Assembly (NCBI GenBank): GCA_053919585.1
Contig: CM132814.1
Length of the DNA: 64,000 nt
DNA from: Euprymna scolopes
Taxonomy: Eukaryota
Strand: one strand, 5' to 3'
A model generated the notes under the pieces. It did not search any database. It was given only the letters and a program-made list of their open reading frames with translations, and was not told the origin of the DNA. Below are positions 4,587 through 51,169 of the stretch, in pieces. A program made the position numbers and the translations under genes. Within the stretch, counting starts at the first letter, position 1. The number at the start of each line of letters is the position of its first letter.

Positions 4587-4716
4587 CTACTTCATTTACT
4601 CACATAAATTTAATATACGAAAGTATAGATTTATGCGTAAACTTTTAGTATTTACTTCAAAAGTGCTCAATACGTAGGTAGAGCTATTTAGTAATTTATA
4701 AAATATATATGGCGAC

Positions 4717-4769
4717 TAAGCTACACTGGATATTCTGCGTTTCATCCACTGTAGGATTCGTCAGGCTTA
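4717..4769 (-). ncRNA. Type I hammerhead ribozyme motif (left arm of the palindrome)
   Basis: Minus strand reads TAAGC-CTGACGA-ATCC tacagt GGAT-GAAA-CGC agaatatcca GT-GTA-GCTTA: stem I TAAGC/GCTTA, CUGANGA core, 4-bp stem II, GAAA, short stem III and a GUA cleavage triplet. Confidence 0.8.
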
Positions 4770-4775
4770 TGTGCA

Positions 4776-4828
4776 TAAGCCTGACGAATCCTACAGGGAA
4801 TGAAACGCAGAATATTCAGTGTAGCTTA
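4776..4828 (+). ncRNA. Type I hammerhead ribozyme motif (right arm; stem II weakened)
   Basis: TAAGC-CTGACGA-ATCCtacagGGAAT-GAAA-CGC aGAATATTCa GT-GTA-GCTTA; loop III carries the palindrome GAATATTC. Confidence 0.7.
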
Positions 4829-4851
4829 GTCGCCATATATATTTTATAAAT

Positions 4852-4921
<70 letters not shown>

Positions 4922-6116: not shown

Positions 6117-6334
6117 NNNNNNNNNNNNNNNNNNNNNNNNNNNNNNNNNNNNNNNNNNNNNNNNNNNNNNNNNNNNNNNNNNNNNNNNNNNNNNNNNNNN
6201 NNNNNNNNNNNNNNNNNNNNNNNNNNNNNNNNNNNNNNNNNNNNNNNNNNNNNNNNNNNNNNNNNNNNNNNNNNNNNNNNNNNNNNNNNNNNNNNNNNNN
6301 NNNNNNNNNNNNNNNNNNNNNNNNNNNNNNNNNN
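6117..6334. other. Assembly gap (N-run)
   Basis: Run of N. Confidence 1.
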
Positions 6335-11838: not shown

Positions 11839-11990
11839 NNNNNNNNNNNNNNNNNNNNNNNNNNNNNNNNNNNNNNNNNNNNNNNNNNNNNNNNNNNNNN
11901 NNNNNNNNNNNNNNNNNNNNNNNNNNNNNNNNNNNNNNNNNNNNNNNNNNNNNNNNNNNNNNNNNNNNNNNNNNNNNNNNNNNNNNNNNN
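11839..11990. other. Assembly gap (N-run)
   Basis: Run of N. Confidence 1.
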
Positions 11991-17431: not shown

Positions 17432-17639
17432 NNNNNNNNNNNNNNNNNNNNNNNNNNNNNNNNNNNNNNNNNNNNNNNNNNNNNNNNNNNNNNNNNNNNN
17501 NNNNNNNNNNNNNNNNNNNNNNNNNNNNNNNNNNNNNNNNNNNNNNNNNNNNNNNNNNNNNNNNNNNNNNNNNNNNNNNNNNNNNNNNNNNNNNNNNNNN
17601 NNNNNNNNNNNNNNNNNNNNNNNNNNNNNNNNNNNNNNN
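17432..17639. other. Assembly gap (N-run)
   Basis: Run of N. Confidence 1.
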
Positions 17640-26700: not shown

Positions 26701-26930
26701 NNNNNNNNNNNNNNNNNNNNNNNNNNNNNNNNNNNNNNNNNNNNNNNNNNNNNNNNNNNNNNNNNNNNNNNNNNNNNNNNNNNNNNNNNNNNNNNNNNNN
26801 NNNNNNNNNNNNNNNNNNNNNNNNNNNNNNNNNNNNNNNNNNNNNNNNNNNNNNNNNNNNNNNNNNNNNNNNNNNNNNNNNNNNNNNNNNNNNNNNNNNN
26901 NNNNNNNNNNNNNNNNNNNNNNNNNNNNNN
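26701..26930. other. Assembly gap (N-run)
   Basis: Run of N. Confidence 1.
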
Positions 26931-28859: not shown

Positions 28860-31800
28860 TCAATATCTTTTTCTTTTTGGGTTTACCATTAATGGTTCAT
28901 TCACTTTTCTTTTCCTACCTGATCTTCGGGGTTCAGGTGCATTTTGAGGCGGTTCCAAATTAAAAGATTCGTATATGATATCTATGGTGTCTTCCTCTTC
29001 GACTGTTGTCGTATCATCATCATCTTGGATATGACGTTTTTTTTATCTGATTTAGGTGCCTTTTATGTATATTCTGTTGACCTTTAATCATGTATGTACA
29101 ATCACCAATGCGTTTATCAACTACTCCACATTCCCAGTAAGATGTGTTATTTCTGTAGCACTTAAAATATACTCGATCTCCCGAGTTATATTTCTTTCTT
29201 CTCGTGTGTGTAGTGTTTCGGATAATTGCCTGCCTTGGCAATAGTTTGTCAAACGCTGATTTTACCTTTCTGGCAAACATTAGATCAGCTGGTGATATGT
29301 TTGATGGTGTACTAGGATGTGGTGTAATCCTATATACTTGCAAGAATTGTTGCAAAGCTTTTTCTGTTGGTGTTCCAATGGATTTCTTTAACGCTCGTTT
29401 TAGCGTGCTCACGAACCTTTCCGCGAGGCCGTTCGACCTTGGATGATATGGCGGAGTCGTGATGTGCTTCACTCAGAACGTGTCGCAAAATTCCTTAAAC
29501 TCTGCGGATGTGAACTGCGTTCCGTTGTCAGTGACCAGTGTGTCTGGTACACCGAATCTTGCAAACAACTCGTGTAGGAACCCTATTGAGTTGTTCGTTG
29601 TTGGATTCCTGCAACGCATTACCTCCGGCCATTTTGTGAAACTATCCACTACAATTAAATAATAGTCTTCACCTACTGGACCAGCGAAATCCATCTGGAT
29701 TCTCGACCATGGTTGGTCGGTTTTCGGCCAAGGTTTGTGTACTATAGGTGGAGATTTTGCCACTAACTGGCATCCTTTACATTTATCAATTGTTGTCGCT
29801 ATGTCAGTGTCCATGTTACGCCAGTACATGTAGCTTCTCATTAACGACTTCATTCGATTTATCCCCGGATGTCCTGTGTGGAAATCTCTTAACATCCTAT
29901 TCTGCAATGTTTTGGGTATTACCACTCTCTCGCTGTACAGTAACACATCGTCACATATGGAGAAAACTTCCTGCACCTTTGTGTCCGTTATAATTTTCTC
30001 TTTTATGTCCTTTATATATTCGTCTTTCTCGGCTTCCCTTTTAATGTCCGACAAAGTTACGGGTAGTTCCTTAATGATGTTTGCTACCATATTTTTTACT
30101 TCAACATTTGTCCGAATTGCTGCAATGACTGATTCTTCCAGATTGTGTTTCTGTGGTATCAGTCTTGACAATCCATCCGCATGGCAAATCTTTTTTTATG
30201 CTAGATGCTGTAGCTGGAAATTGTAATTAAGTATTATTGTACCCCAGCGCAGCAATCTATTTGCGGTGTATACCGGCAATCCTTTTTTTGATCCATAGAT
30301 CGTGACTAACGGTTTATAGTCGGTTTCAAGTATGAATTGTCTACCATATAAATATCGGTGAAATTTAGTCACGGCAAAGATTATGCTCAACGCTTCTTTT
30401 TCGATTTGTGAATATGCCCTTTCGGCTGGTATCAGCGTTCTCGAAACGTGCGCTATTGGTTTTCTAGACCCATCCTGCATAATATGTTGAATGCATGCTC
30501 CTAAGCCGTAGGAGCTAGCGTCACTAGCGACGACTATTTTTAAGTTTGTGTCAAAGTGCGTTAAGAATAATTCGGATGTTAGTGCGCTTTTTATTTTGTC
30601 AAAAGCGGTTTGACATTCTTGCGTCCAGTTCCACGGTGTATCCTTTTTAAGCAGATTATTTAAGGGGGCTCGCAAGTTATGCATTCCTTCAATAAAAGAT
30701 TGGTAATAATTTGCGAGTCTTAAGAAACTCTGCAAGGTTGTTACATTATCGGGTGCTGGCATATTTTTTATTGCCGCAGATCTGTCCGGGTTTGGACGTC
30801 GTCCATGTTCGTTTATTATGTGTCCAAGATACTTAATCTTGCTCATACAAAAGTCACATTTACTTTCTTTTACTTTAAAGCCGAATTCTTGTATTCGAGT
30901 AAATACTTGTTTCAAATGTTCCTTATGTTCTTCTAGAGATTTGCTCCTGACAACAATGTCGTCCAGGTATGCACATGCGCACTCAATACCACTTAGCATG
31001 GTGTCCATCGCTTGCTGAAAGATGGCAGGCGCTACTTTGATGCCAAAAGGCAATCGGTTGTATTTGTATAATCCCTTATGCGTATTGATGCATAGTATTT
31101 TTGAGCAATTCTCCTCGACCGGTATTTGCAAATACGCGTCGCTCAAGTCTATCTTGGAGACGATATTACCCCCATTCAACTTCGTGAATATTTCCTCTGG
31201 GCTTGGTAGAGGGTAATGGTGATTTTTTAATAGGGAGTTGACCCCGGTCGAAAAGTCTGCGCACACTCTAACTTCGTCATTCTTTTTCTTTACGTATACG
31301 GTGGGGGCTGCCCACTCGCTGTGTTCTATTTTTGATAGAATTCCCGTCTGTTCCAATCTATTTAATTCTTTATCAATCTTTTCCAACCCAGCGAACGGAA
31401 CATTTCGCTTTTTTCTAAAAATTGGGCTGGCGTTTTCTTTAAGTTCAAACGAGGCCTTGAATTTATTGCAGCGACCTAAGTTAGTCGTGAATGCCTCAGG
31501 AAATAATTCTTTTAAATCGTCTTTTATATTTACTGTTGTTGGAGAAGAACATTCTATTTTTTTACAGAATGTATTGATTGGCTTATCCCATAGTCCGAAT
31601 TTCTCAATTAAATCTATTCCAAACAGATTTTCACTATTTTTTAGTACGAATATTTTTAATTTCCTCGAAATCCCTTTCAATTTTATCGGGAGGACAACTT
31701 CTCCTTCAAATTTTATACCACCACCAGTTACCGTACGGGCTGCTTTACTAGTTTTCATCATGGCCGGTTTTCCCAACTTTTTCCACGTATTCAGGTTTAT

Positions 31801-32160
31801 TATAGAAACATCGGATCCGGAGTCGAGTTGTAACTTTATTGATGTTTTAAATATTTCCACTTTTACGTATTTTCGCCGATCTTTGTCTAATTTTGTATTT
31901 GATTTTGTTTGCTGTACTCTCTTTCTGGTGTAATCTTTATATCTGCAGCAATCGCTTTTGTGTCCCACCTTCTTACAAATGTAGCATTTTTTCTTCTTAT
32001 AAGGACAATCTGATTCCCAATGCTTTTCTGCACATCCCTTACAGTTATATCTAGGAAGAGGCTTGTTATATTCTGTACTATATTTATGGTTATTATCTTT
32101 GGAATATCCCGTTCCATTGCTTTTCTTTGTAAAGATCTTGGTTGGTGCGTAAGGGTTTTC
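28860..32160 (-). pseudogene. pol: Gypsy NC-protease-RT-RNaseH-integrase (pol), interrupted
   Basis: Zinc knuckles CKGCAEKHWESDC and CYICKKVGHKSDC; protease LDSGS; RT YLDD; RNase H DAS..EALS; integrase HTGHPG..CKGC, DFAGP, TDNGTQF, SNGLAERF. Frameshifts at homopolymer runs near 30190 and 29045, an in-frame TGA at 29473-29475, and the natural stop at 28860-28862. Confidence 0.93.
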
Positions 32161-32193
32161 TAACTTTTCTTACATATGCCACTCCGGATTCTT

Positions 32194-33087
32194 CTATATA
32201 TTTTTAATCCCATTTAGTGTAATGACCCTTTCACAGTCCTCTGCTAGTTTCTGGAGGGTTAAATCTTGCTCAGATTCCAGCTTAGACAACACTCGTCTGC
32301 GTATTTCTGCATTTTTCGTGGAAACTAACCCTTGAGCGAAGATTAGACATTTAAAATCTTCTACCGTTAGTTCTGCAAGCTTAAAATTATCGCAGTTTTT
32401 ATTGACAACTGATGCGTATGTCAAATAATCTTGGTTGTCCATCTTTCTTTGATTCATGCACAGCCATCTTTTATGAAAAAGAGATATATTTGGATTAAAT
32501 AATTCTTTTAGTAATTTTACAGCTTCCATGAACTCTAATTCCGCAGTTTTTTTAGGTAATATGTAATCTACGAATTTGCTGTGTTCTGATGTACCCAATT
32601 TCCTGAGTAAGAGGCTCACTTTCTGACTATTAGGCCAATTTTTACAGTCCAGTTGAAAAACATCCTTGTATCTTGTGTAGTATGCTTCAAAATTCTTCTC
32701 TTCCTCAGGCATATAATGAAATGTGTCCATGCTATTAAAAATAGTTGTATGGGAGAAATTAACACTGTCGACATTTTCTCGATTACTCTTTAGTAGTTCC
32801 AGTGTTTTAACAAAACGTTCCTCTTGTCTTTCTTCATATTCCAATTGTAGTTTCTTATGCCTTTCTTCCTGTTCCAATTGCAGTTTTTTCTGCTTTAATT
32901 GTGCCATTTTCTGCTTTTCTTCTTGTTCCTGCTGCCATTGCAATAATCTGTCCTCTCTCTTTTCCTCGCGGTCAGCCTGTGTCTGTATTTGTGTTTGCAA
33001 AAGCTCGTTTTGTGTAGCTTGTCTGCGTTCATCTCGCTCAGCCTGTGTTTGTAAAAATTGCATGAACATTTTTGATAAGTCTTCCAT
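32194..33087 (-). CDS. gag: Gypsy gag (coiled-coil N-terminus plus capsid-like region); likely start MEDLSKMF at 33087
   Basis: ORF 32194-33336, with a Q/E-rich coil then FEAYYTRY..LLLRKLG..SLFHKRW..FKCLIFAQGL. Same reading frame as pol; separated from it by a local double frameshift at ~32160-32215. Confidence 0.88.
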   Translation of the reverse strand: MEDLSKMFMQFLQTQAERDERRQATQNELLQTQIQTQADREEKREDRLLQWQQEQEEKQKMAQLKQKKLQLEQEERHKKLQLEYEERQEERFVKTLELLKSNRENVDSVNFSHTTIFNSMDTFHYMPEEEKNFEAYYTRYKDVFQLDCKNWPNSQKVSLLLRKLGTSEHSKFVDYILPKKTAELEFMEAVKLLKELFNPNISLFHKRWLCMNQRKMDNQDYLTYASVVNKNCDNFKLAELTVEDFKCLIFAQGLVSTKNAEIRRRVLSKLESEQDLTLQKLAEDCERVITLNGIKNI

Positions 33088-34003
33088 GTTTTTTTTTTTT
33101 TTTAGTGTGTAGTTAAAAAAATATTGTACCATGTACCATATACACCGGTTTGGGTTACAACAAAAAAGCAAATTGCTGTAAGCTCCTGTTTTCAATAATA
33201 CTATCGCTGCTTGCAATAATATATTCTTTTTGCGAGTCACGCTGCAAAAAAAAAATAAAACAGGTTTATCTGGAATCACGAAATGGAATTGACTTTCCGT
33301 TTTTAGGCACTTACTAATACGTAACTCTTTCCACAAAATAAAAGTTTTTTTTTATCGAGTCACAATTGAATAAATGTATGCAGTACATTTAGTTCTTTGA
33401 GGTTTTTTCTCTAGTATTTTAGTAATTAAAATACCTCTTAAATTGAGATTACCTTTTTTTCCGTGACGTTTTACTGTATTATCCGTTATTCAGTGACAAC
33501 TTCAAGTAAAAAATCCTTTCCTTGAATTTTAGTTTTAGCTGTGGTATTTCCTTTTAGTACCGACGTCAACCAAAACATTAATTAAAAAGTCCTTTAGTTG
33601 TTGTTTTGTTTACAGAGAACAGTAATTAGAATCCACTGGTGAACTTTTTTCGTAGGTTACTTCCTTGCTTTTCGTAATACGGGTCTGACCTGTCGTTTTT
33701 GCGACAGAACAACGTTCGCTTTTCGTTTGCAAGTTGGTCCTTTAGTAAGATTTGTCGTGTAGCGACAAAACAAAAATTCACTTTTACATTCGTTTGCAAG
33801 TCGGATTCCCAGAAAACGGCGTAAATTGTCGCTTTTGCCACGTTAGAGTTTTTTTGTCACTTGAGTTGAAACCTCCTTTTAGCGTAAAATCCGTTTGCTC
33901 GTCAACACTTTGCATTCCTTAAAAAAAATGGTCAACCTTTGCGTTGTATTTTTTTTTTTTTTAAATAGTTCTTCGTCAAACTGTTATATTTGACGCTTCA
34001 TAT

Positions 34004-36590: not shown

Positions 36591-36783
36591 AGCTCAGAGA
36601 AGCACTTAACGCACCATCCTCAGCTCATCTAGCTCAGAGAAGCACTTAACACACCATCCTCAGCTCATCTAGCTCAGAGAAGCACTTAACACACCATCCT
36701 CAGCTCATCTAGCTCAGAGAAACACTTAACACACCATCCTCAACTCATCTAGCTCAGAGAGGCACAACACACCATCCTCTGCT
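36591..36783. repeat. 40-bp minisatellite, about 4.8 copies
   Basis: AGCTCAGAGAAGCACTTAACACACCATCCTCAGCTCATCT starting at 36591, 36631, 36671, 36711 and (partial) 36751. Confidence 0.97.
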
Positions 36784-39025
36784 AAACGTGTCGAAACACG
36801 CAGGACTTCGGTAGAAAGTCTTGCTCTGTTATTGTATCGATCCTCTGTTCGTCGTTGACATAATTCTACATAATTCTACAATTGTTTTTAGCTGTTTAAT
36901 TTTTTAACTTTTAATTTCATCTCAATCTTTAATTATCAGACAGTCGATTACCAAACATAACGTTTACACACATTTCGTTACTAACTAGATGACATTTTTT
37001 TTTTACTGTCGTGCTTGTTCGATAACTCGGGGGGTAACCTTGTTTCACCGCGAATAATCTTAACTCGTATGATGCCAACAGCAAAAATTACTTTTTAAAA
37101 ATATTTGTTCACGTGAGACTTGCACTCATTAAAAACTACCGACAAACAGACACCATTTTGTTTTTATACACCGAAATGCTATTTTTTAAAGTAAAGTAAT
37201 TCATTTTTAAATCGTTGAAGAGCGCCAATAATATTGACGATAAATTTCCATTTTGTTTGCATCTTTTCTCTTTTTGTATGGCACATTCGCTTGTAATTAT
37301 GATTTTTCTTGAATTGAGGGGAAAGAACTTGTGAATATCGACTGGTCGATAAAAAAAAAATCAGCGTAACTTTGATTTGATTAGACATGTTATTGATTGA
37401 ATCGTGGAGAATGAAAATACAAACACAAGACGAATAACATTTCAAAGCATACGCACATCAACGTAATAATCAATAGCATACACATTTATCAACAAATCAT
37501 TAAATTATTAAGAATAAAATGTTTTAATAAAATATATAAATAAATCAGAAAAAATCAATCAGAAAAAAATGAATAAAACATGAACGAAATATATTTTCGG
37601 AAAATTAATAAAGAAATATGTAAGAAATGGGTAAACTTAAAGCCAATCATCGAAATAGCTAAAGTTTCGTCTGTTGTTATGTAACATAAAAGAAAACAAA
37701 TACTTTTTCAACTACAATTGCTTACATTAATACATTTTTTCTAATTTTCGTATATTTCCTTATATTTATATAGTTATAGATAACACATTGGAATAGACTC
37801 AGAGATTTAAACTAAAAAATTATTTTAATATTTTATGCAATTTTTTTGATCTTGCACTTAACGTACCGGGTATATTTTCCAGGTAGTTGTTGCAATTCCT
37901 TTTCATGAGTCCTATTGATACTTTTATTACTAGAATGGTTATAGCACGGGTTCTTCGTATATAACTGTGGGAATTACATAGTATCCGTGAATAGCGGATA
38001 ACTTTTTTTGAGTATTTATTTGGTAAATGTTCTTAAAACTTTATGCTACATTTGATATCAACCTTTTACAGATGGTCTAATAGACACATTTACATATTCC
38101 ATTGTATAGAAGAACCTTTCACCTTGATGCATGGTTGTTCACACTTTTTACTTCTGTTTTGCTATCATTGCTGAGACCAGTCCACTTATAAAAAGCAGCT
38201 ATCTCTATGATATTATTAGGTAGTCATTATAATCATCTCCTGATCAGAGTGGAGCGAATTAATAGAATCATTGTCATCTATATTTGTCTGTGTGAATTTG
38301 TCCAGAACATACTTGTCGCGAATATAGGCGCCTATTCGTGAATAGACACACACGCAGAGACGCGAACTTTAATTACACTGGTCAACAAAGATTTTGGTGT
38401 CTTGTGTTGATCAGTCAATTCTTATAGTTCATGATGGGCTGATTTCAAAAATAACATTTATTTTACCTGATTTGCTCTAGTTTTTCGATATATGATGTGC
38501 CTAAAAGATACAAAAGCATACTTCTCGCCTAGTTAAAGTGAACACATTTGGTGGTATATGTACTAACAACTTATTCAATACAGTTTACAAAAAGCAATGA
38601 TTTTCAAAATTCAAAATTACATCAAACTATTTTGTTCTGATAGAGGATTTCTTTATTTACACGGAAATATTTGTAGATTCAAAACTACAAAAACAAATAT
38701 TGAAGATATAAACAATAATCTTCTTAATTTTCCTTTTCTATTTCAGGAAGTCAGATTGAAAAATGTTATTTAAAGTTTCATATCTTGATTAAACCTGTCT
38801 GAGGTTCCATTTAACGATATTAATTTTTTCAAACTAAATACATTTTTGACTTTTGTAAACTGTTGATGATCATTTTATTTTTTTCCTAGCTCAAAACTTT
38901 TATGGAAATATCGTTGACTACTATTGGAAGGTTCACTTAAATACAACTGTATCTACTTACTTAGTGATAGTTTGAACTTTATTATTTTCTTATTTGAGAT
39001 ATAATAACTAAATAAATATACAAAA

Positions 39026-39510
39026 ATGTAATCATAGATTCGATCATGCAAGAACCACCCAGATTCATTTTGTTATATTTGTGTAGACTTTCGAGTAAAT
39101 GATAAAAAATAGTTTAACAGATTTTATCCGAAAAAAAACTTATTATGCTTATTTTGGTGTGAATACCGGTGATGAAGAATAATATTGGGCTCCACGTATA
39201 GTTTGCAAAAGACGTATTGAACATTTAGGCAATGGACTCAGTTTTCTCGAAAATCCGTAAGGTCTGGAGTACTAATGATTTCGAGAGAGTAAAAAAATTA
39301 CTTCAACGCCTGGTATTTTAGTTCATTAATTCGTTGTTTTTGTAATTAATATATTTTTTAATTTAACAAAAATTAATAATAAGAAGAGAAATACCTAGTT
39401 TAACCCAGCCTTCCCTTTACAATTCGATCAGAATTTTCTCTAAATCGATTTAGACAGATTTCCTGAAAATTTTGGCAATTTCAGTGAGGACCAAGTTGAA
39501 AGATTTACAC
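39026..39510 (+). pseudogene. Chapaev3-like transposase, N-terminal Zn region joined by deletion to the C-terminal motif
   Basis: SCKNHPDSFCYIC..TDFIRKKTYYAYFGV..WAPRIVCK..GVLMISRE..PSLPFTIR, then directly DLDRFPENFGNFSEDQVERF; stops and frameshifts. Confidence 0.8.
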
Positions 39511-42500
39511 ATATATATGTTCTCACATTTAGGAAAATTTGGAGAATGCAGAATATATCTTTTCAGATTTAGCGGAATTTGGAGGAATGCAGAATATATC
39601 TTCTCACATGAAGAGGAATTAAGAGGAATGCAGAATATATCTTCTAACATTCAGGGAAATTTTGAGGAATGCAGAATATATCTTCTCACATTTAGGAAAA
39701 TTTGGAGGTGTGCCGAATATATCTTCTCACATTTAGGGGAATTTGGTTGAATGCAGAATATATCTTCTCATATTTAGGGGAATTTGGAGGAATGCAGAAT
39801 ATATCTTCTCACATTTAGGGGAATTTGGAGGAATACAGAATATATCTTCTCACATTTAGGGGAATTTGGAGGAATGCAGAATATATCTTCTCACATAAAG
39901 GGGAATTTGGAGAAATGCAGACTAAATCTTCTCACATTTAGGGGAATTTGATTGAATGCAGAATATATCTTCTCAAATTTACAGAACTCTGGAGGAATGC
40001 AGAATACATCTTCTCACATTTAGGGGAATTTGGAGGAATGCAGAATATATTTTCTCACATTTAGGCGCATTTAGAGGAATGCAGAATATATCTTCACACA
40101 TTTAGGGAAATTTTGAGGAATACAGAATATATCTTCTCACATTAAGGGGAATTTGTTTGAATGCAGAATATATATTCTCATATTTAGGGGAATTTGGAGG
40201 AATGCAGATGTATTTTCTCACATTTAGGAAAATTTGGAGAAATGCAGAATATATCTTCTCACATTTAGGCAAATGTGGGTAAATGCAGAACATATTTTCT
40301 CACATTGAAAGGCATTTAGAGGAATGCAGAATATATCTTCTCAGATTTCAAGAAATTTAGACGAATGCAGAATATATCTTCTCAAATTAAGGGGAATTTG
40401 GAGGAATGCAGAATATATCTTCTCACATTAAGGGACATTTTGAAAAATGGAGAATATATCTCCTCACATTTAGGGGAATTTGGAGGAATGCACAATATAT
40501 CTTCTCACATTTACGGAATTTGGACGAATACAGAATATATCTTCTCACATTTAGGGGAATTTGGTTGAATGCAGAATATATCCTCTCACATAAGGGGAAT
40601 TCGGTTGAATGCAGAATATATTTTCTCACATGAAGGGGAATTTGGAGGAAAGCACAATATATTTTCTCACATTAAGGGGAATTTAGAGGAATGCAGAATA
40701 TAGCTTCTCACATTTAGGGGAATTTGGAGGAATGCAGAATATATTTTCTCACATTTAGGCGCATTTAGAGGAATGCAGAATATATCTTCACACATTTAGG
40801 GATATTTGGTTGAATGTAGACCATATCTTCTCACATTTAGGGGAATTTTGAGGAATGCAGAATATATCTTCTCATATTTAGGGGAATTTGGAGGAAGGCA
40901 GAATATATCTTCTCACATAAAGGGGAATTTGGAGAAATGCAGAATATATCTTCTCACATTTAGGGGAATTTGGAGGAATGCAGAATATATCTTCTCAAAT
41001 TTACGGAACTCTGGAGGAATGCAGAATATATCTTCTCAAATTAAGGGGCATTTCGTTGAATGCGGAATATATCTTCTGAGATTAAGGGGAATTTATATGG
41101 ATGCAGAATATATCCCCTCACATTTGGGAGAATTTGGTTGAATGCAGAATATATCTTCTCACATTGATGGGAATTTAGAGGAATGCAGAATATATCTTCT
41201 CACATTGATGGGAATTTAGAGGAATGCAGAATATATCTTCTCACATAAAGGGGAATTTTGAGGATTGCAGAATATATCTTCTCACATCAGGGGAATGTGG
41301 GTAAATGCAGAATATATCTTCTCACGTGTAGGGAATTTGGTTGAATGCAGAATACATCTCATCACATTTAGGGGAATTTGGGTTAATGCAGAATATATCT
41401 TCTCACGTGTAGGGAATTTGGTTGAATGCAGAATACATCTCATCACATTTAGGGGAATTTGGGTTAATGCAGAATATATCTTCTCACGTGTAGGGAATTT
41501 GGTTGAATGCAGAATACATCTCATCACATTTAGGGGAATTTGGGTTAATGCAGAATATATCTTCTAACATTAAGGGGAATTTTGAGGAATGCCGAATATA
41601 TCTTATGACATTTAAAGGACCGTCGTTGAATGCACAATATATCATCTGATATTTAGGGAAATTGTGGGTAATGCAGAATATATCTTCTCAAATAAGCGAA
41701 ATTTTGTATTAATGTAGAATATATCTTCTCACATGTATGGGAATTAAGACAAATGCAGAATATATCTTCTCAAATTTAGAGGAATTTAGAGGAATGCAGG
41801 ATATATCTTCTCACATTAAGGGGAATTACGAGGAATGCAGAATATAGCTTTTAACATTTAGGAACATTTGGAGGAATGCAGTATATATCTTCTCTCATTA
41901 AGGGGAATTTTTAGAAATTAAGACTATATCTTCCTACATTTTGGGGAATTTGGTTGAATGCAGAATATATCTCATCACATTTAGGGGAATTAGGGTTAAT
42001 GCAGAATATATCTTATCATATAAAGGGGAATTTGGAGGAAGGCCGCATATATCTTCTGACATATAAGGGAATTTGGTTGAATGCACAATATATCTTCTGA
42101 CATTTTGGGAAATTTTAAGCACTGCAGAATAAGTCTTCTCACATTTAGCGAAATTTTGATGAATGTAGAATATATCTTCTCACATGTATGCAGAATATGT
42201 CTTCTCACATTTAAGGGATTTTAGAGGAATGCAGGATATATCTTCTTACATTTAGGCGCATTTAGATGAATGCAGAATATATCTTCTCACATTTAGGAAA
42301 ATTTGGGTAAATGCAGAATATATCTTCTCACATTAAGAGGAATTACGAGAAATGCAGAATATATCTTCTCACAATTTGGAGAATTTGGAGGAATGCAGAA
42401 TATATCTTCTCACATTTAGGGGAATTTGGATGAATGCAGAATATATCTTCTCACATTAAGGGACATTTTGAAAAATGGAGAATATATCTCCTCACATTTA

Positions 42501-45500
42501 GGGGAATTTGGAGGAATGCACAATATATCTTCTCACATTTACGGAATTTGGACGAATACAGAATATATCTTCTCACATTTAGGGGAATTTGGTTGAATGC
42601 AGAATATATCCTCTCACATAAGGGGAATTCGGTTGAATGCAGAATATATTTTCTCACATGAAGGGGAATTTGGAGGAAAGCACAATATATTTTCTCACAT
42701 TAAGGGGAATTTAGAGGAATGCAGAATATAGCTTCTCACATTTAGGGGAATTTGGAGGAATGCAGAATATATTTTCTCACATTTAGGCGCATTTAGAGGA
42801 ATGCAGAATATATCTTCACACATTTAGGGATATTTGGTTGAATGTAGACCATATCTTCTCACATTTAGGGGAATTTTGAGGAATGCAGAATATATCTTCT
42901 CATATTTAGGGGAATTTGGAGGAAGGCAGAATATATCTTCTCACATAAAGGGGAATTTGGAGAAATGCAGAATATATCTTCTCACATTTAGGGGAATTTG
43001 GAGGAATGCAGAATATATCTTCTCAAATTTACGGAACTCTGGAGGAATGCAGAATATATCTTCTCAAATTAAGGGGCATTTCGTTGAATGCGGAATATAT
43101 CTTCTGAGATTAAGGGGAATTTATATGGATGCAGAATATATCCCCTCACATTTGGGAGAATTTGGTTGAATGCAGAATATATCTTCTCACATTGATGGGA
43201 ATTTAGAGGAATGCAGAATATATCTTCTCACATTGATGGGAATTTAGAGGAATGCAGAATATATCTTCTCACATAAAGGGGAATTTTGAGGATTGCAGAA
43301 TATATCTTCTCACATCAGGGGAATGTGGGTAAATGCAGAATATATCTTCTCACGTGTAGGGAATTTGGTTGAATGCAGAATACATCTCATCACATTTAGG
43401 GGAATTTGGGTTAATGCAGAATATATCTTCTCACGTGTAGGGAATTTGGTTGAATGCAGAATACATCTCATCACATTTAGGGGAATTTGGGTTAATGCAG
43501 AATATATCTTCTCACGTGTAGGGAATTTGGTTGAATGCAGAATACATCTCATCACATTTAGGGGAATTTGGGTTAATGCAGAATATATCTTCTAACATTA
43601 AGGGGAATTTTGAGGAATGCCGAATATATCTTATGACATTTAAAGGACCGTCGTTGAATGCACAATATATCATCTGATATTTAGGGAAATTGTGGGTAAT
43701 GCAGAATATATCTTCTCAAATAAGCGAAATTTTGTATTAATGTAGAATATATCTTCTCACATGTATGGGAATTAAGACAAATGCAGAATATATCTTCTCA
43801 AATTTAGAGGAATTTAGAGGAATGCAGGATATATCTTCTCACATTAAGGGGAATTACGAGGAATGCAGAATATAGCTTTTAACATTTAGGAACATTTGGA
43901 GGAATGCAGTATATATCTTCTCTCATTAAGGGGAATTTTTAGAAATTAAGACTATATCTTCCTACATTTTGGGGAATTTGGTTGAATGCAGAATATATCT
44001 CATCACATTTAGGGGAATTAGGGTTAATGCAGAATATATCTTATCATATAAAGGGGAATTTGGAGGAAGGCCGCATATATCTTCTGACATATAAGGGAAT
44101 TTGGTTGAATGCACAATATATCTTCTGACATTTTGGGAAATTTTAAGCACTGCAGAATAAGTCTTCTCACATTTAGCGAAATTTTGATGAATGTAGAATA
44201 TATCTTCTCACATGTATGCAGAATATGTCTTCTCACATTTAAGGGATTTTAGAGGAATGCAGGATATATCTTCTTACATTTAGGCGCATTTAGATGAATG
44301 CAGAATATATCTTCTCACATTTAGGAAAATTTGGGTAAATGCAGAATATATCTTCTCACATTAAGAGGAATTACGAGAAATGCAGAATATATCTTCTCAC
44401 AATTTGGAGAATTTGGAGGAATGCAGAATATATCTTCTCACATTTAGGGGAATTTGGATGAATGCAGAATATATCTTCTCACATTTAGGGGAATTTGGAT
44501 GAATGCAGAATATATCTTCTCACATTTAGGGAAATTTGGAGGAATGCAGAATATATCTTCTCACAATTTGCAGAATTTGGAGGAATGCAGAATATATCTT
44601 CTCACATTTACGGAAATTTGGAGGAATGCAGAATATATCTGCTCACATTAAGGGAGATTTCGTTGAATGCAGAATATATCTTCTCACATTTAGGGGAATT
44701 TGGTTGGATGCAGGATATATCCCCTCACGTTAAGGAGAATTTGTTGAATGCAGAATATATCTTCTCACATTTAGGGGAATTTGGAGGAATGCAGAATATA
44801 TCTTCTCACATTAAGGGTCATTCGGGGGAATGTAGAATATATCTTCTCACATTTAGGGGAATTTAGAGGAATGCAGAATATATCTTCTCACATTAAGGGG
44901 AATTTGGAGGAATTCAGAATATATCTTCTAAGATTTAGGGGAATTTATAGGAATGCAGAATATATCTTCTCACATTAAGAGGAATTGTGAGGAATGCAGA
45001 ATATATCGTCTCACATTAAGGGTCATTCGGAGGAATGCAGAATATATCTTCTCACATTTAGGGGAATTTAGAGGAATGCAGAATATATCTTCTAACATTA
45101 AGGGGAATTTGGCGGAATTCAGAATATATCTTCTCACATTTAGGGGAATTTAGAGGAATGCAGGATATATCTTCTCACATTTAGGGGAATTTGCAGGAAT
45201 ACAGAATATATCTTCTCACATTAAGGGTCATTTGGAGGAATGCAGAATATATCTTCTAACATTTAGGGGAATTTGGTTGAATGCAGAATATATCCTCTCA
45301 CAGTTAGGGAAATTTGGTTGAATGCAGAATACATCTTCTCACATTAAGGGGAATTTGGCGGAATGAAGAATATATCTACTCACATTAAGGGGAATTTAGA
45401 GAAATTCAGAATATATCTTCTCACATTTAGGGGAATTTAGAGGAATGCAGAATATATCTTCTCACATTTAGGGGAATTTGGTTGAATGCAGAATATATCC

Positions 45501-48500
45501 TCTATCATTAAGGGGAATTGGGTTAATGCAGAATATATCTTCTCAAATTTAGGGGAATTTGGAGGAATGCAGTATATATCTCATTACATTTAGGGGAATT
45601 TGGGTTAATGCAGAATATATCTTCTCACATTAAGGGGAATTTTGAGGAATGCCGAATATATCTTCTGACATTTAAGGGAATTTGGTTGAAGACATAATAT
45701 ATCTTCTGACATTTAGGGAAATTTGGAGTAATGCAGAATATATATCATCTCACATTTAGGGAAATTTGGAGGAATGCAGTATATATCTTCTCACATTTAT
45801 TGGAATTTAGAGGAATGCTGAATGTATCTTCTCACATGTAGGGGAAGTTATAGTAATCCAGGATATATCTTCTTACATGAAGGGGTATATGGAGGTATGC
45901 AGAATATATCTTCTCACATTTAGGGGAATTTGGTAGAATGCAGAATATGTCTTCTAACATTTAGGGAGATTTGGAGGAATGCAGGATATATCTTCTCACA
46001 TTTAGGGGAATTTGAAGGAATGCAGAATATATCTTCTAACATGCAGTGGAATTTGGTTGAATGCAGAATATATCTTCTCACATTTAGGAAATGTGGTTTA
46101 ATACAGAATATATCTTCTCACATTAAGGAAAATCCAGGTTAATGCAGAATATATCTTCTCAGATTAAGGGGAATTTTTAAGAATGCAGGAAATATCTTCT
46201 CACATTGATGGGAATTTGAAGGAATGCAGAATATATCTTCTAACATGCAGTGGAATTTGGTTGAATGCAGAATATATCTTCTCACATTTAGGAAATGTGA
46301 TTTAATACAGAATATATCTTCTCACATTAAGGAAAATCCAGGTGAATGCAGAATATATCTTCTCACATTAAGGAAAATCCAGGTGAATGCAGAATATATC
46401 TTCTCAGATTAAGGGGAATTTTTAAGAATGCAGGAAATATCTTCTCACATTTATGGGAATTTGAAGGAATGCAGAATATATCTTCTAACATGCAGTGGAA
46501 TTTGGTTGAATGCAGAATATATCTTCTCACATTTAGGAAATGTGATTTAATACAGAATATATCTTCTCACATTAAGGAAAATCCAGGTGAATGCAGAATA
46601 TATCTTCTCACATTAAGGAAAATCCAGGTGAATGCAGAATATATCTTCTCACATTTAGGGGAATTTGGAAGAATGCAGATTACATCTTCTCACATTTAGG
46701 GAAATTTGGGTAAATGCAGAATATATCTTCTCATATTAAAAGGCATTTAGAGTAATGCAGAATATATCTTCCCACATTAAGGGGAATTTGTTGAATGCAA
46801 AATATATCTTCTCACAGTTAGGGGAATTTTGAGGAATGCAGAATATATCTTCTCACATTTACGGAAATTTCGAGGAAGGCAGAATATATCTTCTCACATT
46901 AAGGGGGATTTAGTTGCATGTAGAATATATTTTCTTACATTTAGGGGAATTTGGTTTGATGCAGAATATATCCCCTCACATTTAGGAGAATTTGTGGAAT
47001 GCAGAATATATCTTCTCACATTTAGGGGAATTTTAAGGAATGCAGAATATATCTTCTCACATTTATGGGAATGGGGTTGAATGCAGAATATATCCTCTCA
47101 CATTAAGGCGAATTTGGTTGAATGCAGAATATATCTTCTGACATTAAGGGTCATTTGGAGGAATGCAGAATATATCTTCTAACATTTAGGGGAATTTGGT
47201 TGAATGCAGAATACATCTTCTCACATTAAGGGGAATTTGGCGGAATGAAGAATATATCTTCTCACATTAAGGGGAATTTAGAGGAATGCAGAATATATCT
47301 TCTCACATTTACGGACATTTGGAGGAATGCAGAATATATCTTCTCACATTAAGGGAATTTTAAGGAATGCAGAATATATCCTCTCACATTTAGGGGAATT
47401 TGGTTAAATGCAGAATATATCTTCTCACATTAAGGGGAATTTTGAGGAATGCTGAATATATCTTCTGACATTTAAGGGAATTTGGTTGAAGACATAATAT
47501 ATCTTCTGACATTTAGGGAAATTTGGAGTAATGCAGAATATATATCATCTCACATTTAGGGAAATTTGGAGGAATGCAGTATATATCTTCTCACATTTCT
47601 TGGAATTTAGAGGAATGCTGAATATATCGTCCCACATGTAGGGGAAGTTAGAGTAATGCAGGATATATCTTCTTACATGAAGGGGTATATGGAGGTATGC
47701 AGAATATATCTTCTCAAATTTAGGGGAATTTGGCGGAATGCAGAATATATCTTCTCACATTTAAGGGATTTTGATTGAATGCAGAATATATCTTCTCACA
47801 TTTAGGGAAATTTGGAAGAATGCAGATTACATCTTCTCACATTTAGGGAAATTTGTGTAAATGCAGAATATATCTTCTCATATTAAAAGGCATTTAGAGT
47901 AATGCAGAATATATCTTCTCACATTAAGGGGAATTTGTTGAATGCAAAATATATCTTCTCACATTTACGGAAATTTCGAGGAAGGCAGAATATATCTTCT
48001 AACATTTAGGGGAATTTAGAGGAATGCAGAATATATCTTCTCACATTTATGGGAATTTGGTTGAATGCAGAATATATCCTCTCACATTAAGGCGAATTTG
48101 GTTGAATGCAGAATATATCTTCTGACATTAAGGGTCATTGTGAGGAATACAGAATATATCTTCTCACATTAAGGGTAATTTTGAGGAATGCAGAATATAT
48201 CTTCTCACATTTAGGGGAATTTTTAAGAATGCAGAATATATCATCTCACATGTAGGGGACTTTAGAGGAATGCAGGATATATATCTCACATTAAGGCGGA
48301 TTTGGAGGAATGACGAGTATATCTTCTTACATTTAGGGGAATGTTGTTAAATGCAGCATATATCTTCTCACATTAAGGGGAATTTGTTTGAATGCAGAAT
48401 AGATCCCCTCACATTTAGGAGAACTTTTTGAATGCAGAATATATCTTCTTAATGTAAGGGAAATTTAGAGAAATGCAGAATATATCATCTTATATTTAGG

Positions 48501-50505
48501 GTAAATTGGGAGGAATGCAGAATATGTCTTCTCACATTTAGGGGAATTTGGTTGAATGCAGAATATATCCTCTCCCTTTAAGGGGAATTTGGTTGAATGC
48601 AGAATACATCTTATCATATTAAGGCGAATTTGGAGGAATGCAGCATATATCTACTCACATTAAGGGGAATTTAGAGGAATGCAGAATATATCTTCTCACA
48701 TTTTCGGACATTTGGAGGAATGCAGAATATATCTTCTCACATTTATGGGAATTTTTAGAAATGCAGAATATATTTTCTCACATTTACGGGGAATTGTGTT
48801 GGATGCAGAATGTATCCCCTCACATAAAGGGGAATTTTAAGGAATGCAGAATATATCTTCTTACATTAAGATGAATTTGGGTAAATGCAGAATATATCTT
48901 CTCACATTTAGGCGAATTTGGTTGAATGCAGAAAATATTCCATCACATTTAGGGGAATTAAGGTTAATGCAAAATATATCTTCTCACATTTAAGGAAATT
49001 TTGAGGAATTCAGAATATGTTTTCTCACATTTATTGGAATTTAGAGGAATGCAGAATATATCTTCTCACATGTAGGGGAATTTAGAGGAATGCAGGATAT
49101 ATCTTCTCACATTAAGGGGAATTTGGAGGAATGCAAAATATATCTTCTCAAATTTAGGGGAATTTGGTTGAATGCAGAATAGATCTTCTCACATTTAGGG
49201 AAATGTGGTTGAATACAGAATATATCTTCTCAAATTTAGGGAAATTCAGGTGAATGCAGAAAATATCTTCTCAGATTAAGGGGAATTGTGAGGAATGCAG
49301 GATATATCTTCTCACATTTATGGGAATTTGGAGGAATGCAGAATATATCGTCTAACATTGATGGGAATTTGTTTGAATGCAGAGTATATCTTCTCACATT
49401 TAGAGGAATTTGATTGAATGCAGAATATATCTTCTTACATTTAGGGGAATTTGGAGCAATGCAGACTATATCTTCTCACATTTAGGGATATTTGGTTGAA
49501 AAAAATATATCTTCCCACATTTAGGGGAATTTTGAGGAATGCAGATTATATCTTCTAACATTTAGTGAAATTTGTGTAAATGCAGAATATATCTTTTCAC
49601 ATTCGGAGGGATTAAGAGGAATGCAGAATATATCTTCTCACATTTAGGGGAATTTGGAGGAATGCAGAATATATCTTCTCACATTTAGGGGAATGTGGAG
49701 GAAAGCAGAATATATTTTCTCACAGTAAGGGAAATTTTGAGGAATGCAGAATATATCCTCTCACATTTACGGACATTTGGAGGAAGGCAGAATATATCTT
49801 CGAACATGAAGGGGGATTTCGTTGAATGCAGAATATATCTTCTCACATTTAGAGGAATTTGGTTGGATGCAGAATATATCCCCTCACATTTAGGAGAATT
49901 TGTTGAATGCAGAATATATCTTCTCACATTTAGGGGAATTTAGAGGAATGCAGAATATATCTTCTCACATTTAGGGGAATTTGGTTGAATGCAGAATATA
50001 TCCTCTCACATAAAGGGTCATTTGGAGGAATGCAAAATATTCCTTCTCACATTTAGGGGAATGTTGAGGAATGCAGAATATATCATCTCACATTTAAGGA
50101 AATTTGTTTCATGCAGAATATATCTTCTCACATTTAGGGGAATTTGGAGGAATGCACAATATATCTTCTCACATTTATGGGAATTTGGTTTAATCCAGAA
50201 TATATCTTCTCACATTTAGGGAAAATCAGGTGAATGCAGAATATATCTTCTACAATTTATGGGAATTTTATTGAATGCAGAATATATCTTCTCACATTTA
50301 TGGGAATTTTCTTGAATGCAGAATATATCTTCTCACATTTAGGGAAATTCAGGTGAATGCAGAAGATATCTTCTCACATTAAGGGGAATTTTGAGGAATG
50401 AAGAATATATCTTCTCACTTTTATCGGAACTTTGAGGAATGCAGAATATATCCTTTCACATTTAGGGAATTTGGAGGAATGCAGAATATATCCCATCCCA
50501 TTTAG
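39511..50505. repeat. 41-bp tandem satellite array, ~11 kb, ~268 units
   Basis: Consensus ATATATCTTCTCACATTTAGGGGAATTTGGAGGAATGCAGA; conserved AATGCAGAATATATCTTCTCACA half and a more variable G-rich half. Confidence 0.99.
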
Positions 50506-50645
50506 ATATCAAAGTAATGGAAGAATGTTTTTAAGGCTGATTAGACTGGATAATTTTGTCCAACTGCTGTTGGTGCTTAAAACAAGACAAGCTAGATATT
50601 CTCCACTCTAGAAAGTCTTAAAACAAACGACAATTCTTGCCCTAA
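50503..50645 (+). pseudogene. Chapaev3-like transposase C-terminus
   Basis: DIKVMEECF*G*LDWIILSNCCWCLKQD..HSRKS continues the conserved ERFHQDI..ME.RYQG.W...ML.DYCW.L motif interrupted by the array. Confidence 0.8.
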
Positions 50646-50923
50646 CAATATCTATTATGTAATATTTCTACAAAATTTATTTTATTAATGAGGAAAAAGC
50701 AAAAAAAAAACAATAAATTTATATTAGAAAAATTGTCTCAGAAAACTTAATGACTTATTTTTGACACTTTTTTTTTACAAAATTTATTTTACAAGGGGAT
50801 TTTTATGATAAATGCGACATTTTATGACTTAAAAAACTAGAGCTAAATAGGAAAAAAATTACTGTAATACCAATAATTTATTTTTCAAGGGATCATCAGT
50901 TGTTTACCATGAAACACTGTTTC

Positions 50924-50958
<35 letters not shown>

Positions 50959-51169
50959 TATAGCTTTAAGTAAAAGAGGAAAGAGCAAGATCAATTCCAC
51001 AAAAGGAGACTTACCCGGATAATGCCAAGCTGAACAATAATTATTGGAGCTTATACAATAGGGTAACAAGAGAATGAAATGAAGACAGGAAACTATATAT
51101 ATAGGCAGATATAGAATGGATCATTTATTGAATAATGGAATACAGCCAACATTTGGGGGAGCGAAGCGG

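What the first reader, a model, noticed from the sequence alone, without database searches (positions are those of the whole stretch)
38376..50911. 11-kb satellite array carried inside a Chapaev3-like transposon, splitting the transposase exactly at the conserved Glu motif
Seen: the transposase reads ..FPENFGNFSEDQVERF up to ~39506, then ~268 copies of a 41-bp unit, then resumes at DIKVMEE..CCWCLK (50505 onward). Essentially no coding sequence is lost from the expected ERFHQDIK junction, and both element ends (CACTGG.. and ..CCATG) plus a subterminal inverted motif remain. Established: Chapaev3 elements have CAC..GTG ends and TWA TSDs and are related to Transib/RAG1; TE-borne satellites are known mainly from Helitrons, MITEs and foldback elements. 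Inference: this is either a satellite nucleated inside a CMC transposon or a transposon-mobilised satellite cassette that could seed arrays across the genome. I do not know of a described Chapaev case.
Basis: partly seen in the sequence, partly recalled or inferred. Interest (0 to 1): 0.78.

Follow-up and report, generated by a model that had tools for sequence, protein, structure and literature searches.

The report
Tandem array splitting a dead Chapaev3 transposon
An 11-kb run of about 269 copies of a 41-base unit sits inside the broken remains of one old Chapaev3-type jumping gene in a mollusc genome; it is real, but it looks like an ordinary repeat that grew inside dead DNA, not a satellite-carrying vehicle.

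Summary
A one-stranded 41-bp x 269 array (39513-50492) lies between two collinear pieces of one transposase relic. Real database relatives read ...GERF|HQDI... without a gap there, so 0-2 codons are lost, inside the family's most conserved motif.

The Chapaev3 call also holds:
- The left end, A|TTA|CACTGGTCAACA, matches published Chapaev3 ends and those of three relatives' contigs.
- A 560-aa relative folds like the RAG1 core and Transib (Z 18-19).

The "transposase" is a dead, internally deleted remnant. It keeps about 94 N-terminal and 76 C-terminal codons of roughly 560, with 7 stops and at least 2 frameshifts. Its right end is degenerate (..CCATG, no GTG, no matching TSD).

The 41-bp unit shows no detectable similarity to the flanking transposon, so "born from the transposon's own sequence" is not supported. 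Monomers lie about 10% from consensus with no higher-order structure, apart from one exact 2,028-bp duplication (recent event or assembly artefact).

Nothing supports a mobilised cassette. The scan has already reported many arrays inside dead transposons elsewhere in this genome.

Verdict: a new member of a known kind, of low to moderate interest.

The parts
38372..38375 (+). Target-site context A|TTA immediately 5' of the element (putative TWA target-site duplication, left copy only)
   Evidence: Sequence read. It fits the Chapaev3 rule 'TWA TSD, inserted between A and T' (PMC4079192). The right flank (AAA|C after 50911) does not repeat it.
38376..38387 (+). Left terminal inverted repeat CACTGGTCAACA
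   Evidence: Compare Bombyx CACGGGTCAACA and lamprey CACTGTGTAACA in the supplement of PMC4079192. Compare also the relatives' contigs: L003 CACAGTCCAACA, L004 CACTGTGCAACA, L006 CACAGGTCTACA.
38451..38505 (+). Left subterminal motif (core GCTCTAGTTTTT at 38474-38485), inverted partner of 50810-50870
   Evidence: Local alignment of the left 400 bp against the reverse complement of the right arm. Exact 12-mer positions.
39041..39346 (+). Decayed N-terminal zinc-finger (Chapa-type) coding remnant, read in three frames with 3 stops and at least 2 frameshifts
   Evidence: tblastn of real relatives. P0172 residues 5-27 match 39041-39109 and residues 27-66 match 39105-39227 (E 5.6e-9). P0215 residues 43-76 match 39221-39322 (E 1.3e-7). 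The remnant reads FCYIC..YYAYFGV..GDEE*YWAPRIVC..RQW..MISRE*KNYFNAWYF.
39347..39416 (+). Internal deletion joint: about 380 codons of the catalytic core (residues ~97-479 of P0172) are absent
   Evidence: N-terminal homology ends near 39322-39346 and C-terminal homology resumes at 39417.
39417..39506 (+). C-terminal coding remnant LQFDQNFL*IDLDRFPENFGNFSEDQVERF (matches MSLKIHFLHSHLDFFPENLGAVSDEHGERF of relatives), ending at codon F509
   Evidence: tblastn, (40-43% identity over 30 residues; E 2e-4 to 5e-3). Family conservation profile.
39507..39512 (+). Six bases (ACACAT) between the last transposon codon and the first in-register monomer; origin unclear (filler, or a damaged His codon CAC)
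   Evidence: Junction print-out.
39513..50492 (+). 41-bp tandem array, 269 copies. Consensus ATATATCTTCTCACATTTAGGGGAATTTGGAGGAATGCAGA. A constant 25-bp core and a variable 16-bp part with two linked variants (GGAGG / GGTTG)
   Evidence: TRF; monomer statistics. Mean identity to consensus is 0.90. Pairwise identity is about 0.80 at every lag from 1 to 200.
40404..44485 (+). Exact tandem duplication of a 2,028-bp block inside the array (40404-42457 is identical to 42432-44485)
   Evidence: 2,054 bp at 100% identity, with mismatches immediately outside. Either a very recent unequal exchange or an assembly artefact.
50493..50498 (+). Tail of the last, diverged partial monomer (ATATATCCCATCC runs from 50486 to 50498), running into CATTTAG
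   Evidence: The 7-mer CATTTAG (50499-50505) is both the conserved monomer segment and, read as CAT TTA G.., the His-Leu in place of the family's His-Gln.
50499..50642 (+). C-terminal coding remnant HLDIKVMEECF*G*LDWIILSNCCWCLKQDKLDILHSRKS*NKRQFLP (residues 510-554 of P0172), with 3 stops
   Evidence: tblastn, (P0160 E 9.5e-6; P0218 E 3.8e-6), collinear without indels with HQDISAMEKRYQGQWSARMLADYCWMLKRD..RKS..F.
50810..50870 (-). Right subterminal motif (reverse complement of GCTCTAGTTTTT at 50832-50843)
   Evidence: It lies 68 bp from 50911, against 98 bp for the left copy.
50900..50911 (-). Degenerate right terminal repeat TTGTTTACCATG (expected ..TGTTGACCAGTG)
   Evidence: aligned by eye to the left TIR (10-11 matches, 1-bp gap). 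A 40-bp search for the left end's reverse complement downstream found nothing better than chance (p 0.95).
50924..50962 (.). (AT)19 microsatellite just outside the right end; may have replaced or obscured about 30 bp of the true terminus
   Evidence: TRF; the motif offset argument rests.

Best explanation
A non-autonomous, internally deleted copy of a Chapaev3-type DNA transposon (about 1.55 kb without the array) inserted at an A|TTA site and then decayed as junk DNA.

Later, at one point between the codons for Phe and His of the GERF-HQDI motif, a short piece of sequence unrelated to the transposon became tandemly duplicated. It was then amplified in place, by unequal exchange or replication slippage of multi-monomer blocks, to some 220-270 copies of a 41-bp unit.

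The array has since aged by point mutation. It was recently lengthened, or mis-assembled, by one exact 2,028-bp block duplication.

The array is a passenger of a dead relic. It is not part of the transposon's design, it is not being mobilised, and its position in the catalytic-Glu motif has no functional meaning, because the catalytic core had already been deleted.

Shown: the anatomy, the family assignment, the decay, and the lack of unit-to-transposon similarity. Inferred: the order of events, in-place growth and the absence of function.
For: Array and its single orientation.

Codon-precise collinearity of the two flanks with real relatives, which argues for one element split by an insertion.

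The host copy is dead. Residues ~97-479 are missing, and there are 7 in-frame stops plus at least 2 frameshifts in about 169 codons. Simulated decay of relatives' coding DNA gives P(7 or more stops) below 0.05 at divergence 0.10 or less, with the best fit at 0.25-0.3.

Monomers are 10% from consensus overall and about 4-5% at core positions. Pairwise identity is flat at 0.80 for all lags, with no higher-order repeat.

Linked monomer variants are intermixed without order.

There is no unit-to-flank similarity, and no other copy of the unit or the element in the window.

Family identity.

Other windows of the same genome hold many single arrays grown inside dead transposons (unverified AI notes, used as context only).
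Against: The genome-wide distribution of the 41-mer and of this transposon family is unknown.

Concerted evolution can make an array look younger than it is, so the comparison 'array younger than relic' is only suggestive.

The source of the 41-bp seed is unexplained.

The 7-bp identity CATTTAG at the right junction could mean a microhomology-guided import of an existing satellite rather than local birth.
Confidence: 0.6

Rival explanations
1. The 41-bp repeat is a pre-existing, multi-locus satellite of this genome. A piece of it, or a circular copy, was integrated into the dead transposon at a break, guided by the 7-bp microhomology CATTTAG, and then grew or arrived long.
For: The unit is unrelated to the flanking transposon. 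The last monomer ends exactly on CATTTAG, which also reads as the next transposon codons. Two intermixed monomer variants suggest that a mixed source array was amplified.
Against: There is no other 41-mer match in the 64-kb window. Nothing turned up in 241 million metagenome records except two single chance hits. Nothing in the protein collection resembles the array's ORFs. All three are weak tests. A 7-bp match at one junction is not improbable for an AT-rich unit.
Confidence: 0.2
2. The array was born from the transposon's own sequence: a 41-bp stretch at or next to the ERF/HQDI site was duplicated and expanded, as reported for many other arrays in this genome.
For: Same-genome precedents exist (unverified notes). 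There are short resemblances: TGGAGGAATG in the unit against TGGAAGAATG 20 bp into the right flank, and CATTTAG at the junction.
Against: Local alignments of the unit trimer to 150 bp and to the whole of either flank score no better than dinucleotide shuffles under five scoring schemes (p 0.13-0.93). The reverse strand of the immediate 120-bp flanks is also negative (p 0.10-0.24 against base-order shuffles). Relatives have no residues between F509 and H510, so there is no room for a 41-bp parent segment.
Confidence: 0.08
3. Transposon-borne cassette: a non-autonomous Chapaev3 family carries the 41-bp repeats internally and spreads them, seeding arrays at many sites.
For: The array lies wholly inside the element's boundaries. 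The left end and the subterminal motifs are preserved. Carriage of satellite-like repeats by mobile elements is documented in molluscs (Helentron in oyster, PMC7492417) and in flies (Tetris, PMC4079207).
Against: The right end is degenerate and no TSD can be verified. The host copy appears to have decayed more than the array has. An 11-kb load is far beyond the short arrays carried by known vectors. No second copy is in the window. The relatives fetched from other species carry no tandem repeat at this site in their coding sequences.
Confidence: 0.06
4. Assembly artefact: the array, or its length, is a mis-join or an over-expansion by the assembler.
For: An exact 2,054-bp repeat sits inside an array whose monomers otherwise differ by about 20%. 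That is the pattern expected from a duplicated read path. The window holds four N gaps elsewhere.
Against: The two flanks are the two halves of one relic, collinear to the codon, which a random mis-join would not produce. No gap lies within 38376-50911. A recent unequal exchange gives the same 100%-identical block.
Confidence: 0.05

Closest known systems
Chapaev3 DNA transposons (Merrow / Garfield / Conan families; Kapitonov and Jurka 2008; Zhang et al. 2014, PMC4079192)
   Same: The 5' end CACTGGTCAACA is preceded by A|TTA. The N-terminal Cys/His finger and the C-terminal H(4)H-GERFHQDI region align to relatives. Those relatives' contigs show CAC..GTG ends flanked by TWA. One relative's predicted fold matches the RAG1 core and Transib.
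   Different: The window copy is a dead deletion derivative without the catalytic core. Its right end lacks GTG and its TSD is not duplicated. No sequence labelled Chapaev3 by Repbase was available for a direct comparison.
Satellite or minisatellite arrays grown inside dead transposable elements
   Same: A long, one-stranded tandem array is confined within one decayed element, and both halves of the parent are still readable.
   Different: In those cases the repeat unit is a recognisable piece of the parent element. Here the unit shows no similarity to the element that hosts it.
Mobile elements that carry satellite-like repeats (oyster Helentron non-autonomous elements, PMC7492417; Drosophila virilis foldback element Tetris, PMC4079207; tandem-repeat MITEs of bivalves)
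   Same: Tandem repeats lie between the ends of a DNA transposon in a mollusc.
   Different: Those families have many copies with short arrays at a fixed internal position and intact ends. Here only one copy is known, it is dead, and it carries about 269 units. Multi-copy carriage could not be tested.

Membership tests
Chapaev3 transposons | Termini 5'-CAC ... GTG-3' within short terminal inverted repeats | tested here: inconclusive
   The left end CACTGGTCAACA is present and close to published and fetched Chapaev3 ends. The right end reads ..TTGTTTACCATG: there is no GTG, and it matches only with a 1-bp gap.
Chapaev3 transposons | 3-bp TWA target-site duplication, insertion between A and T (PMC4079192) | tested here: inconclusive
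   The left flank A|TTA fits. The right flank is AAA|C, so no duplication can be shown. Relatives' contigs show A|TAA..TTA|T (L003), A|TTA (L004) and TAA|T (L006).
Chapaev3 transposons | N-terminal Chapa-type zinc finger in the transposase | tested here: met
   The remnant at 39041-39322 aligns to the CFCYICG..WAPH..C..C..DCYFC N-termini of P0172, P0218 and P0215 (E 5e-9 to 1e-7). That this finger is the 'Chapa domain' rests on the literature (PMC4411706) and was not compared directly. A sequence search of the PDB found nothing.
Chapaev3 transposons | Transposase motifs C(2)C, LH and H(4)H plus the catalytic core, in the window copy | tested here: not met
   Residues ~97-479 of the family protein are deleted. 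Only the H(4)H-to-Glu stretch remains, and it has decayed to QNFL*IDL..VERF.
Chapaev3 transposons | The same motifs and a RAG1/Transib-like catalytic fold, in the protein family to which the remnants belong | tested here: met
   P0172, P0190 and P0262 carry CCFLC/CYLC, PPLHIKLG, HFLHSH and GERFHQ. The AF2 model of P0172 (pLDDT 78) aligns to HzTransib (Z 18.9, 311 residues, rmsd 4.1) and to mouse RAG1 478-1008 (Z 18.4, 332 residues). These stand above P element (Z 11) and Hermes (Z 9).
Transposon-borne satellite cassette (Helentron / Tetris / tandem-repeat MITE type) | The same repeat at the same internal position in several copies of the element, each with its own target-site duplication | not testable with these tools
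There is no second copy in the window. Findings look-ups by sequence were blank, which means nothing.
Transposon-borne satellite cassette (Helentron / Tetris / tandem-repeat MITE type) | The array-bearing copy has transposition-competent ends | tested here: not met
   The right terminus is degenerate, the subterminal motif is offset by 30 bp, and no TSD is present.
Transposon-derived satellite (unit is a piece of the parent element) | The monomer is homologous to a segment of the flanking element | tested here: not met
   Unit trimer against the flanks, five scoring schemes, dinucleotide shuffles: p 0.13-0.93. The reverse strand of the immediate flanks gives p 0.10-0.24 against base-order shuffles. 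blastn of the trimer finds nothing outside the array.
Satellite DNA in the strict sense (abundant, multi-locus) | Many arrays or high genomic abundance | not testable with these tools
   Only this locus is visible. Scans of outside collections were negative but uninformative.

The most novel reading that the evidence does not exclude
A non-autonomous Chapaev3 family of this mollusc carries the 41-bp repeat as an internal cassette at the GERF|HQDI site and has seeded arrays at several loci. This would be a RAG1/Transib-related cut-and-paste transposon acting as a satellite vector, and this copy would be one that expanded after landing.
Probability: 0.05. Interest if true: 0.6.

Novelty: new member of a known kind. 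Interest (0 to 1): 0.25.

Why it matters
Arrays caught inside a still-readable parent element show how tandem repeats start. This one is a clean anatomical example. It adds a Chapaev3 host to the list, and the unit is not derived from the host element, which points to capture of foreign or filler DNA at a break followed by local amplification. That is useful for annotating this repeat-rich mollusc genome, but it does not change what is known. Only the untested vector reading would be of wider interest.

Tried and rejected
1. Pfam scan of the six stop-free coding pieces: nothing.

2. Word-index protein search with the C-terminal remnant read through with X at each break: no candidate shared three words.

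3. A bait typed from my memory of the family motif was used only to fetch real database proteins. All comparisons use the returned proteins.

4. The long 'relatives' P0134, P0135, P0145 and P0163 proved to be chimeric gene models fused to retroelement or ankyrin parts and were dropped.

5. Unit against flanks on both strands, and unit against the whole window: no similarity.

6. blastx of the unit against the fetched proteins gave only a chance-level resemblance (E 1.3 or worse in a 270-protein set) to a mariner-type PPYSPDL..C motif in two chimeric models. I rejected it because the match runs through more than two monomers in shifting frames.

7. Search for a better right end downstream of 50505: none.

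8. Metagenome scan for the 20-base core: two single chance hits in microbial genes.

9. Protein search with a 123-aa array ORF: nothing.

10. Exact look-ups of a junction-spanning ORF and an array ORF: not on record.

Read support, copy number and expression remain untested.

12. Findings look-ups by sequence and by the words Chapaev, ERFHQDI and RAG1: blank.

13. PDB sequence search with the N-terminal finger of P0172: no hit.

Full report
**What is there.** Tandem Repeats Finder reports one array at 39513-50492, with period 41, 269.2 copies and 80% matches. All 145 exact copies of the core GCAGAATATATC are on the + strand, and none lies outside the array in the 64-kb window. blastn of a consensus trimer also finds nothing elsewhere in the window.

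**The flanks.**
- The left flank reads, in one frame, ..LQFDQNFL*IDLDRFPENFGNFSEDQVERF and ends at 39506.
- The right flank reads HLDIKVMEECF*G*LDWIILSNCCWCLKQDKLDILHSRKS*NKRQF from 50499.
- Further upstream (39041-39346) three frames together read FCYICVDF..SLTDFIRKKTYYAYFGVNTGDEE*YWAPRIVCKRRIEHL / RQWTQFSRKSVRSGVLMISRE*KNYFNAWYF.

**How the family was identified.**
- Pfam sees nothing in these short pieces. The word-index search with the remnant read through with X at the breaks found no candidate.
It returned 1,573 database proteins.
- One of them, P0061 (121 aa), found 5,614 relatives when searched without a word index, 182 of them below 1e-30. The longest were chimeric gene models and were set aside.
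- Members of about 550-560 aa (P0172, P0190, P0262) combine four features: an N-terminal CFCYICG..WAPH..C..C..DCYFC finger; CCFLC and PPLHIKLG in the middle; HFLHSH; and GERFHQDI..MLADYCW at the C-terminus. The middle and C-terminal features are the C(2)C, LH and H(4)H motifs that PMC4079192 gives as the Chapaev signature.

**Mapping the window on these proteins.**
- P0172 residues 5-66 match 39041-39227 (E 5.6e-9).
- P0215 residues 43-76 match 39221-39322 (E 1.3e-7).
- Residues 480-509 match 39417-39506.
- Residues 510-554 match 50499-50636.

So the window element keeps about 94 N-terminal and 76 C-terminal codons and lacks residues ~97-479, which is the whole catalytic core. It carries 7 in-frame stops and at least 2 frameshifts. 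It is a dead, internally deleted, non-autonomous copy, not a transposase gene.

**Where the array sits.** In 113 relatives stacked without gaps on the motif, G-E-R-F-H-Q is the most conserved stretch, at 90% or more. In a 17-sequence alignment G506, R508, F509, H510 and Q511 are invariant and E507 is nearly so. The array lies between F509 and H510.
- If CATTTAG at 50499 is transposon sequence (His-Leu in place of His-Gln), no codon is lost.
- If it is the end of the last monomer, whose conserved part is ..CACATTTAG.., two codons are lost.

That the Glu is catalytic is an inference. In the AlphaFold model of P0172 (mean pLDDT 78) it opens helix 503-519. Model residues 198-548 align to mouse RAG1 478-1008 (Z 18.4, 332 residues, rmsd 4.0) and to Helicoverpa Transib (Z 18.9). 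That places E507 within a few residues of RAG1 E962 by distance from the aligned C-terminal end. No residue-level alignment was available.

**Is it Chapaev3?**
- The left end reads A|TTA|CACTGGTCAACA.
- PMC4079192 states that Chapaev3 elements have CAC..GTG ends and TWA duplications and insert between A and T. Its supplement shows lamprey ..ATTA|CACTGTGTAACA and silkworm ..TGTTGACCCGTG|TAA.
- Contigs that encode the fetched relatives show the same features: L003 A|TAA|CACAGTCCAACA...TGTTGGACTGTG|TTA|T; L004 A|TTA|CACTGTGCAACA; L006 ..TGTAGACCTGTG|TAA|T.
- With the fold result, the protein family and the left end meet the Chapaev3 criteria.

The right end of the window copy does not meet them cleanly. 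TTGTTTACCATG matches the left repeat only with a 1-bp gap, lacks GTG and is followed by AAA|C. The subterminal inverted motif (GCTCTAGTTTTT at 38474, its complement at 50832) is real but lies 30 bp nearer the right end. An (AT)19 run follows at 50924. No sequence labelled Chapaev3 by Repbase could be compared directly.

**The array itself.**
- Monomers are on average 90% identical to the consensus. A 25-bp core (AATGCAGAATATATCTTCTCACATT) is at 91-100% per position, except two positions at 82% and 87%. A 16-bp part is much more variable.
- Much of that variation is two linked variants, GGAGG and GGTTG (136 against 61 monomers, almost perfectly linked). They are intermixed without order.
- Pairwise monomer identity is flat at about 0.80 from lag 1 to lag 200. 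There is no higher-order repeat and no decay toward the edges.
- The one exception is a 2,028-bp block: 40404-42457 is repeated exactly at 42432-44485. In an array whose monomers otherwise differ by 20%, this is either a very recent unequal exchange or an assembly artefact, so the true length is about 9 or about 11 kb.

**Origin of the unit.** Notes from other windows of this genome (unverified) describe many arrays that grew from a piece of the dead transposon hosting them, so I tested that here.
- Local alignments of the unit trimer to 150 bp and to the whole of each flank, under five scoring schemes, score no better than dinucleotide shuffles (p 0.13-0.93).
- A first pass on the immediate 120-bp flanks, on both strands, was also negative (p 0.10-0.48).
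- Relatives have no residues between F509 and H510, so there is no room for a 41-bp parent segment.

The unit is therefore foreign to the element as far as can be seen. The left junction is abrupt, with six unassigned bases (ACACAT). The right junction shares the 7-mer CATTTAG. That is compatible with microhomology but is not significant on its own.

**Relative ages.** I mutated the homologous coding DNA of two relatives at random with the window's base composition. Seven or more stops in 169 codons then occur in under 5% of trials at divergence 0.10 or less, with the best fit at 0.25-0.3. The monomers are 0.10 from consensus, and about 0.05 at core positions. Taken at face value, the last amplification is younger than the death of the element, which favours growth inside a relic over carriage by an active element. 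Concerted evolution can rejuvenate arrays, so this is only suggestive.

**What could not be done.**
Read support for the junctions, copy number and expression are untested.
- No tool searches the host genome.
- Indirect attempts were blank and weigh little: the metagenome scan for the core (two chance hits), a protein search with an array ORF, exact look-ups of junction and array ORFs, and findings look-ups.
- A literature search found no paper linking Chapaev elements to satellite arrays. Carriage of satellite-like repeats by Helentrons in oyster and by Tetris in Drosophila is well described.
- The read-through with X was the only joined sequence sent to a tool. No mended or consensus sequence was made.

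**Verdict.** The most likely account is a foreign 41-bp seed captured at a break in a dead, deleted Chapaev3 relic and amplified in place (confidence 0.6). Rivals are import from a multi-locus satellite (0.2), birth from the element's own sequence (0.08), a mobilised cassette (0.06) and an assembly artefact (0.05). The finding is a new member of a known kind, in a genome where this scan has already found many arrays inside dead transposons on other DNA.

Noticed in passing
window 29020-33336 (- strand): A Ty3/Gypsy-type LTR retroelement with long open frames. A 380-aa ORF carries DUF7083. A 590-aa ORF carries protease, RVT_1 and RNase H. ORFs of 232 and 150 aa carry Integrase_H2C2, rve and rve_3. 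It looks younger than the Chapaev relic.
   Followed up: partly
window 36591-36783: A short tandem repeat, 40 bp x 4.9 copies at 94% identity (AGCTCAGAGAAGCACTTAACACACCATCCTCAGCTCATCT), 1.6 kb upstream of the element. By eye it is unrelated to the 41-mer, and the trimer blastn found no match there.
   Followed up: no
window 40404-44485: An exact 2,028-bp tandem duplication inside an otherwise 20%-diverged array. It is a useful marker for checking the assembly with long reads.
   Followed up: partly
window 39513-50492: Each monomer has a constant 25-bp core and a variable 16-bp part. Two tightly linked variants (GGAGG / GGTTG) are scattered without order. Each unit also contains one TTAGGG hexamer.
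   Followed up: partly
window 6117-6334, 11839-11990, 17432-17639, 26701-26930: Four runs of N (assembly gaps or masked stretches), all outside the finding. They were left untouched.
   Followed up: no
window 4689-4856: Another first-stage note on this window reports back-to-back hammerhead ribozymes in a 168-bp palindrome. I did not examine it.
   Followed up: no
P0134, P0135, P0145, P0163 (database proteins): In public gene models the Chapaev3 C-terminal module is often fused to unrelated parts (integrase plus ankyrin, reverse transcriptase, Pao protease plus kelch). These are probably annotation chimeras across nested repeats.
   Followed up: partly
P0218 (344 aa, ENA contig): A relative in another organism is also an internal-deletion derivative that keeps the N-terminal finger and the C-terminal GERFHQD module in one open frame. 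Its breakpoints differ from those of the window copy.
   Followed up: no
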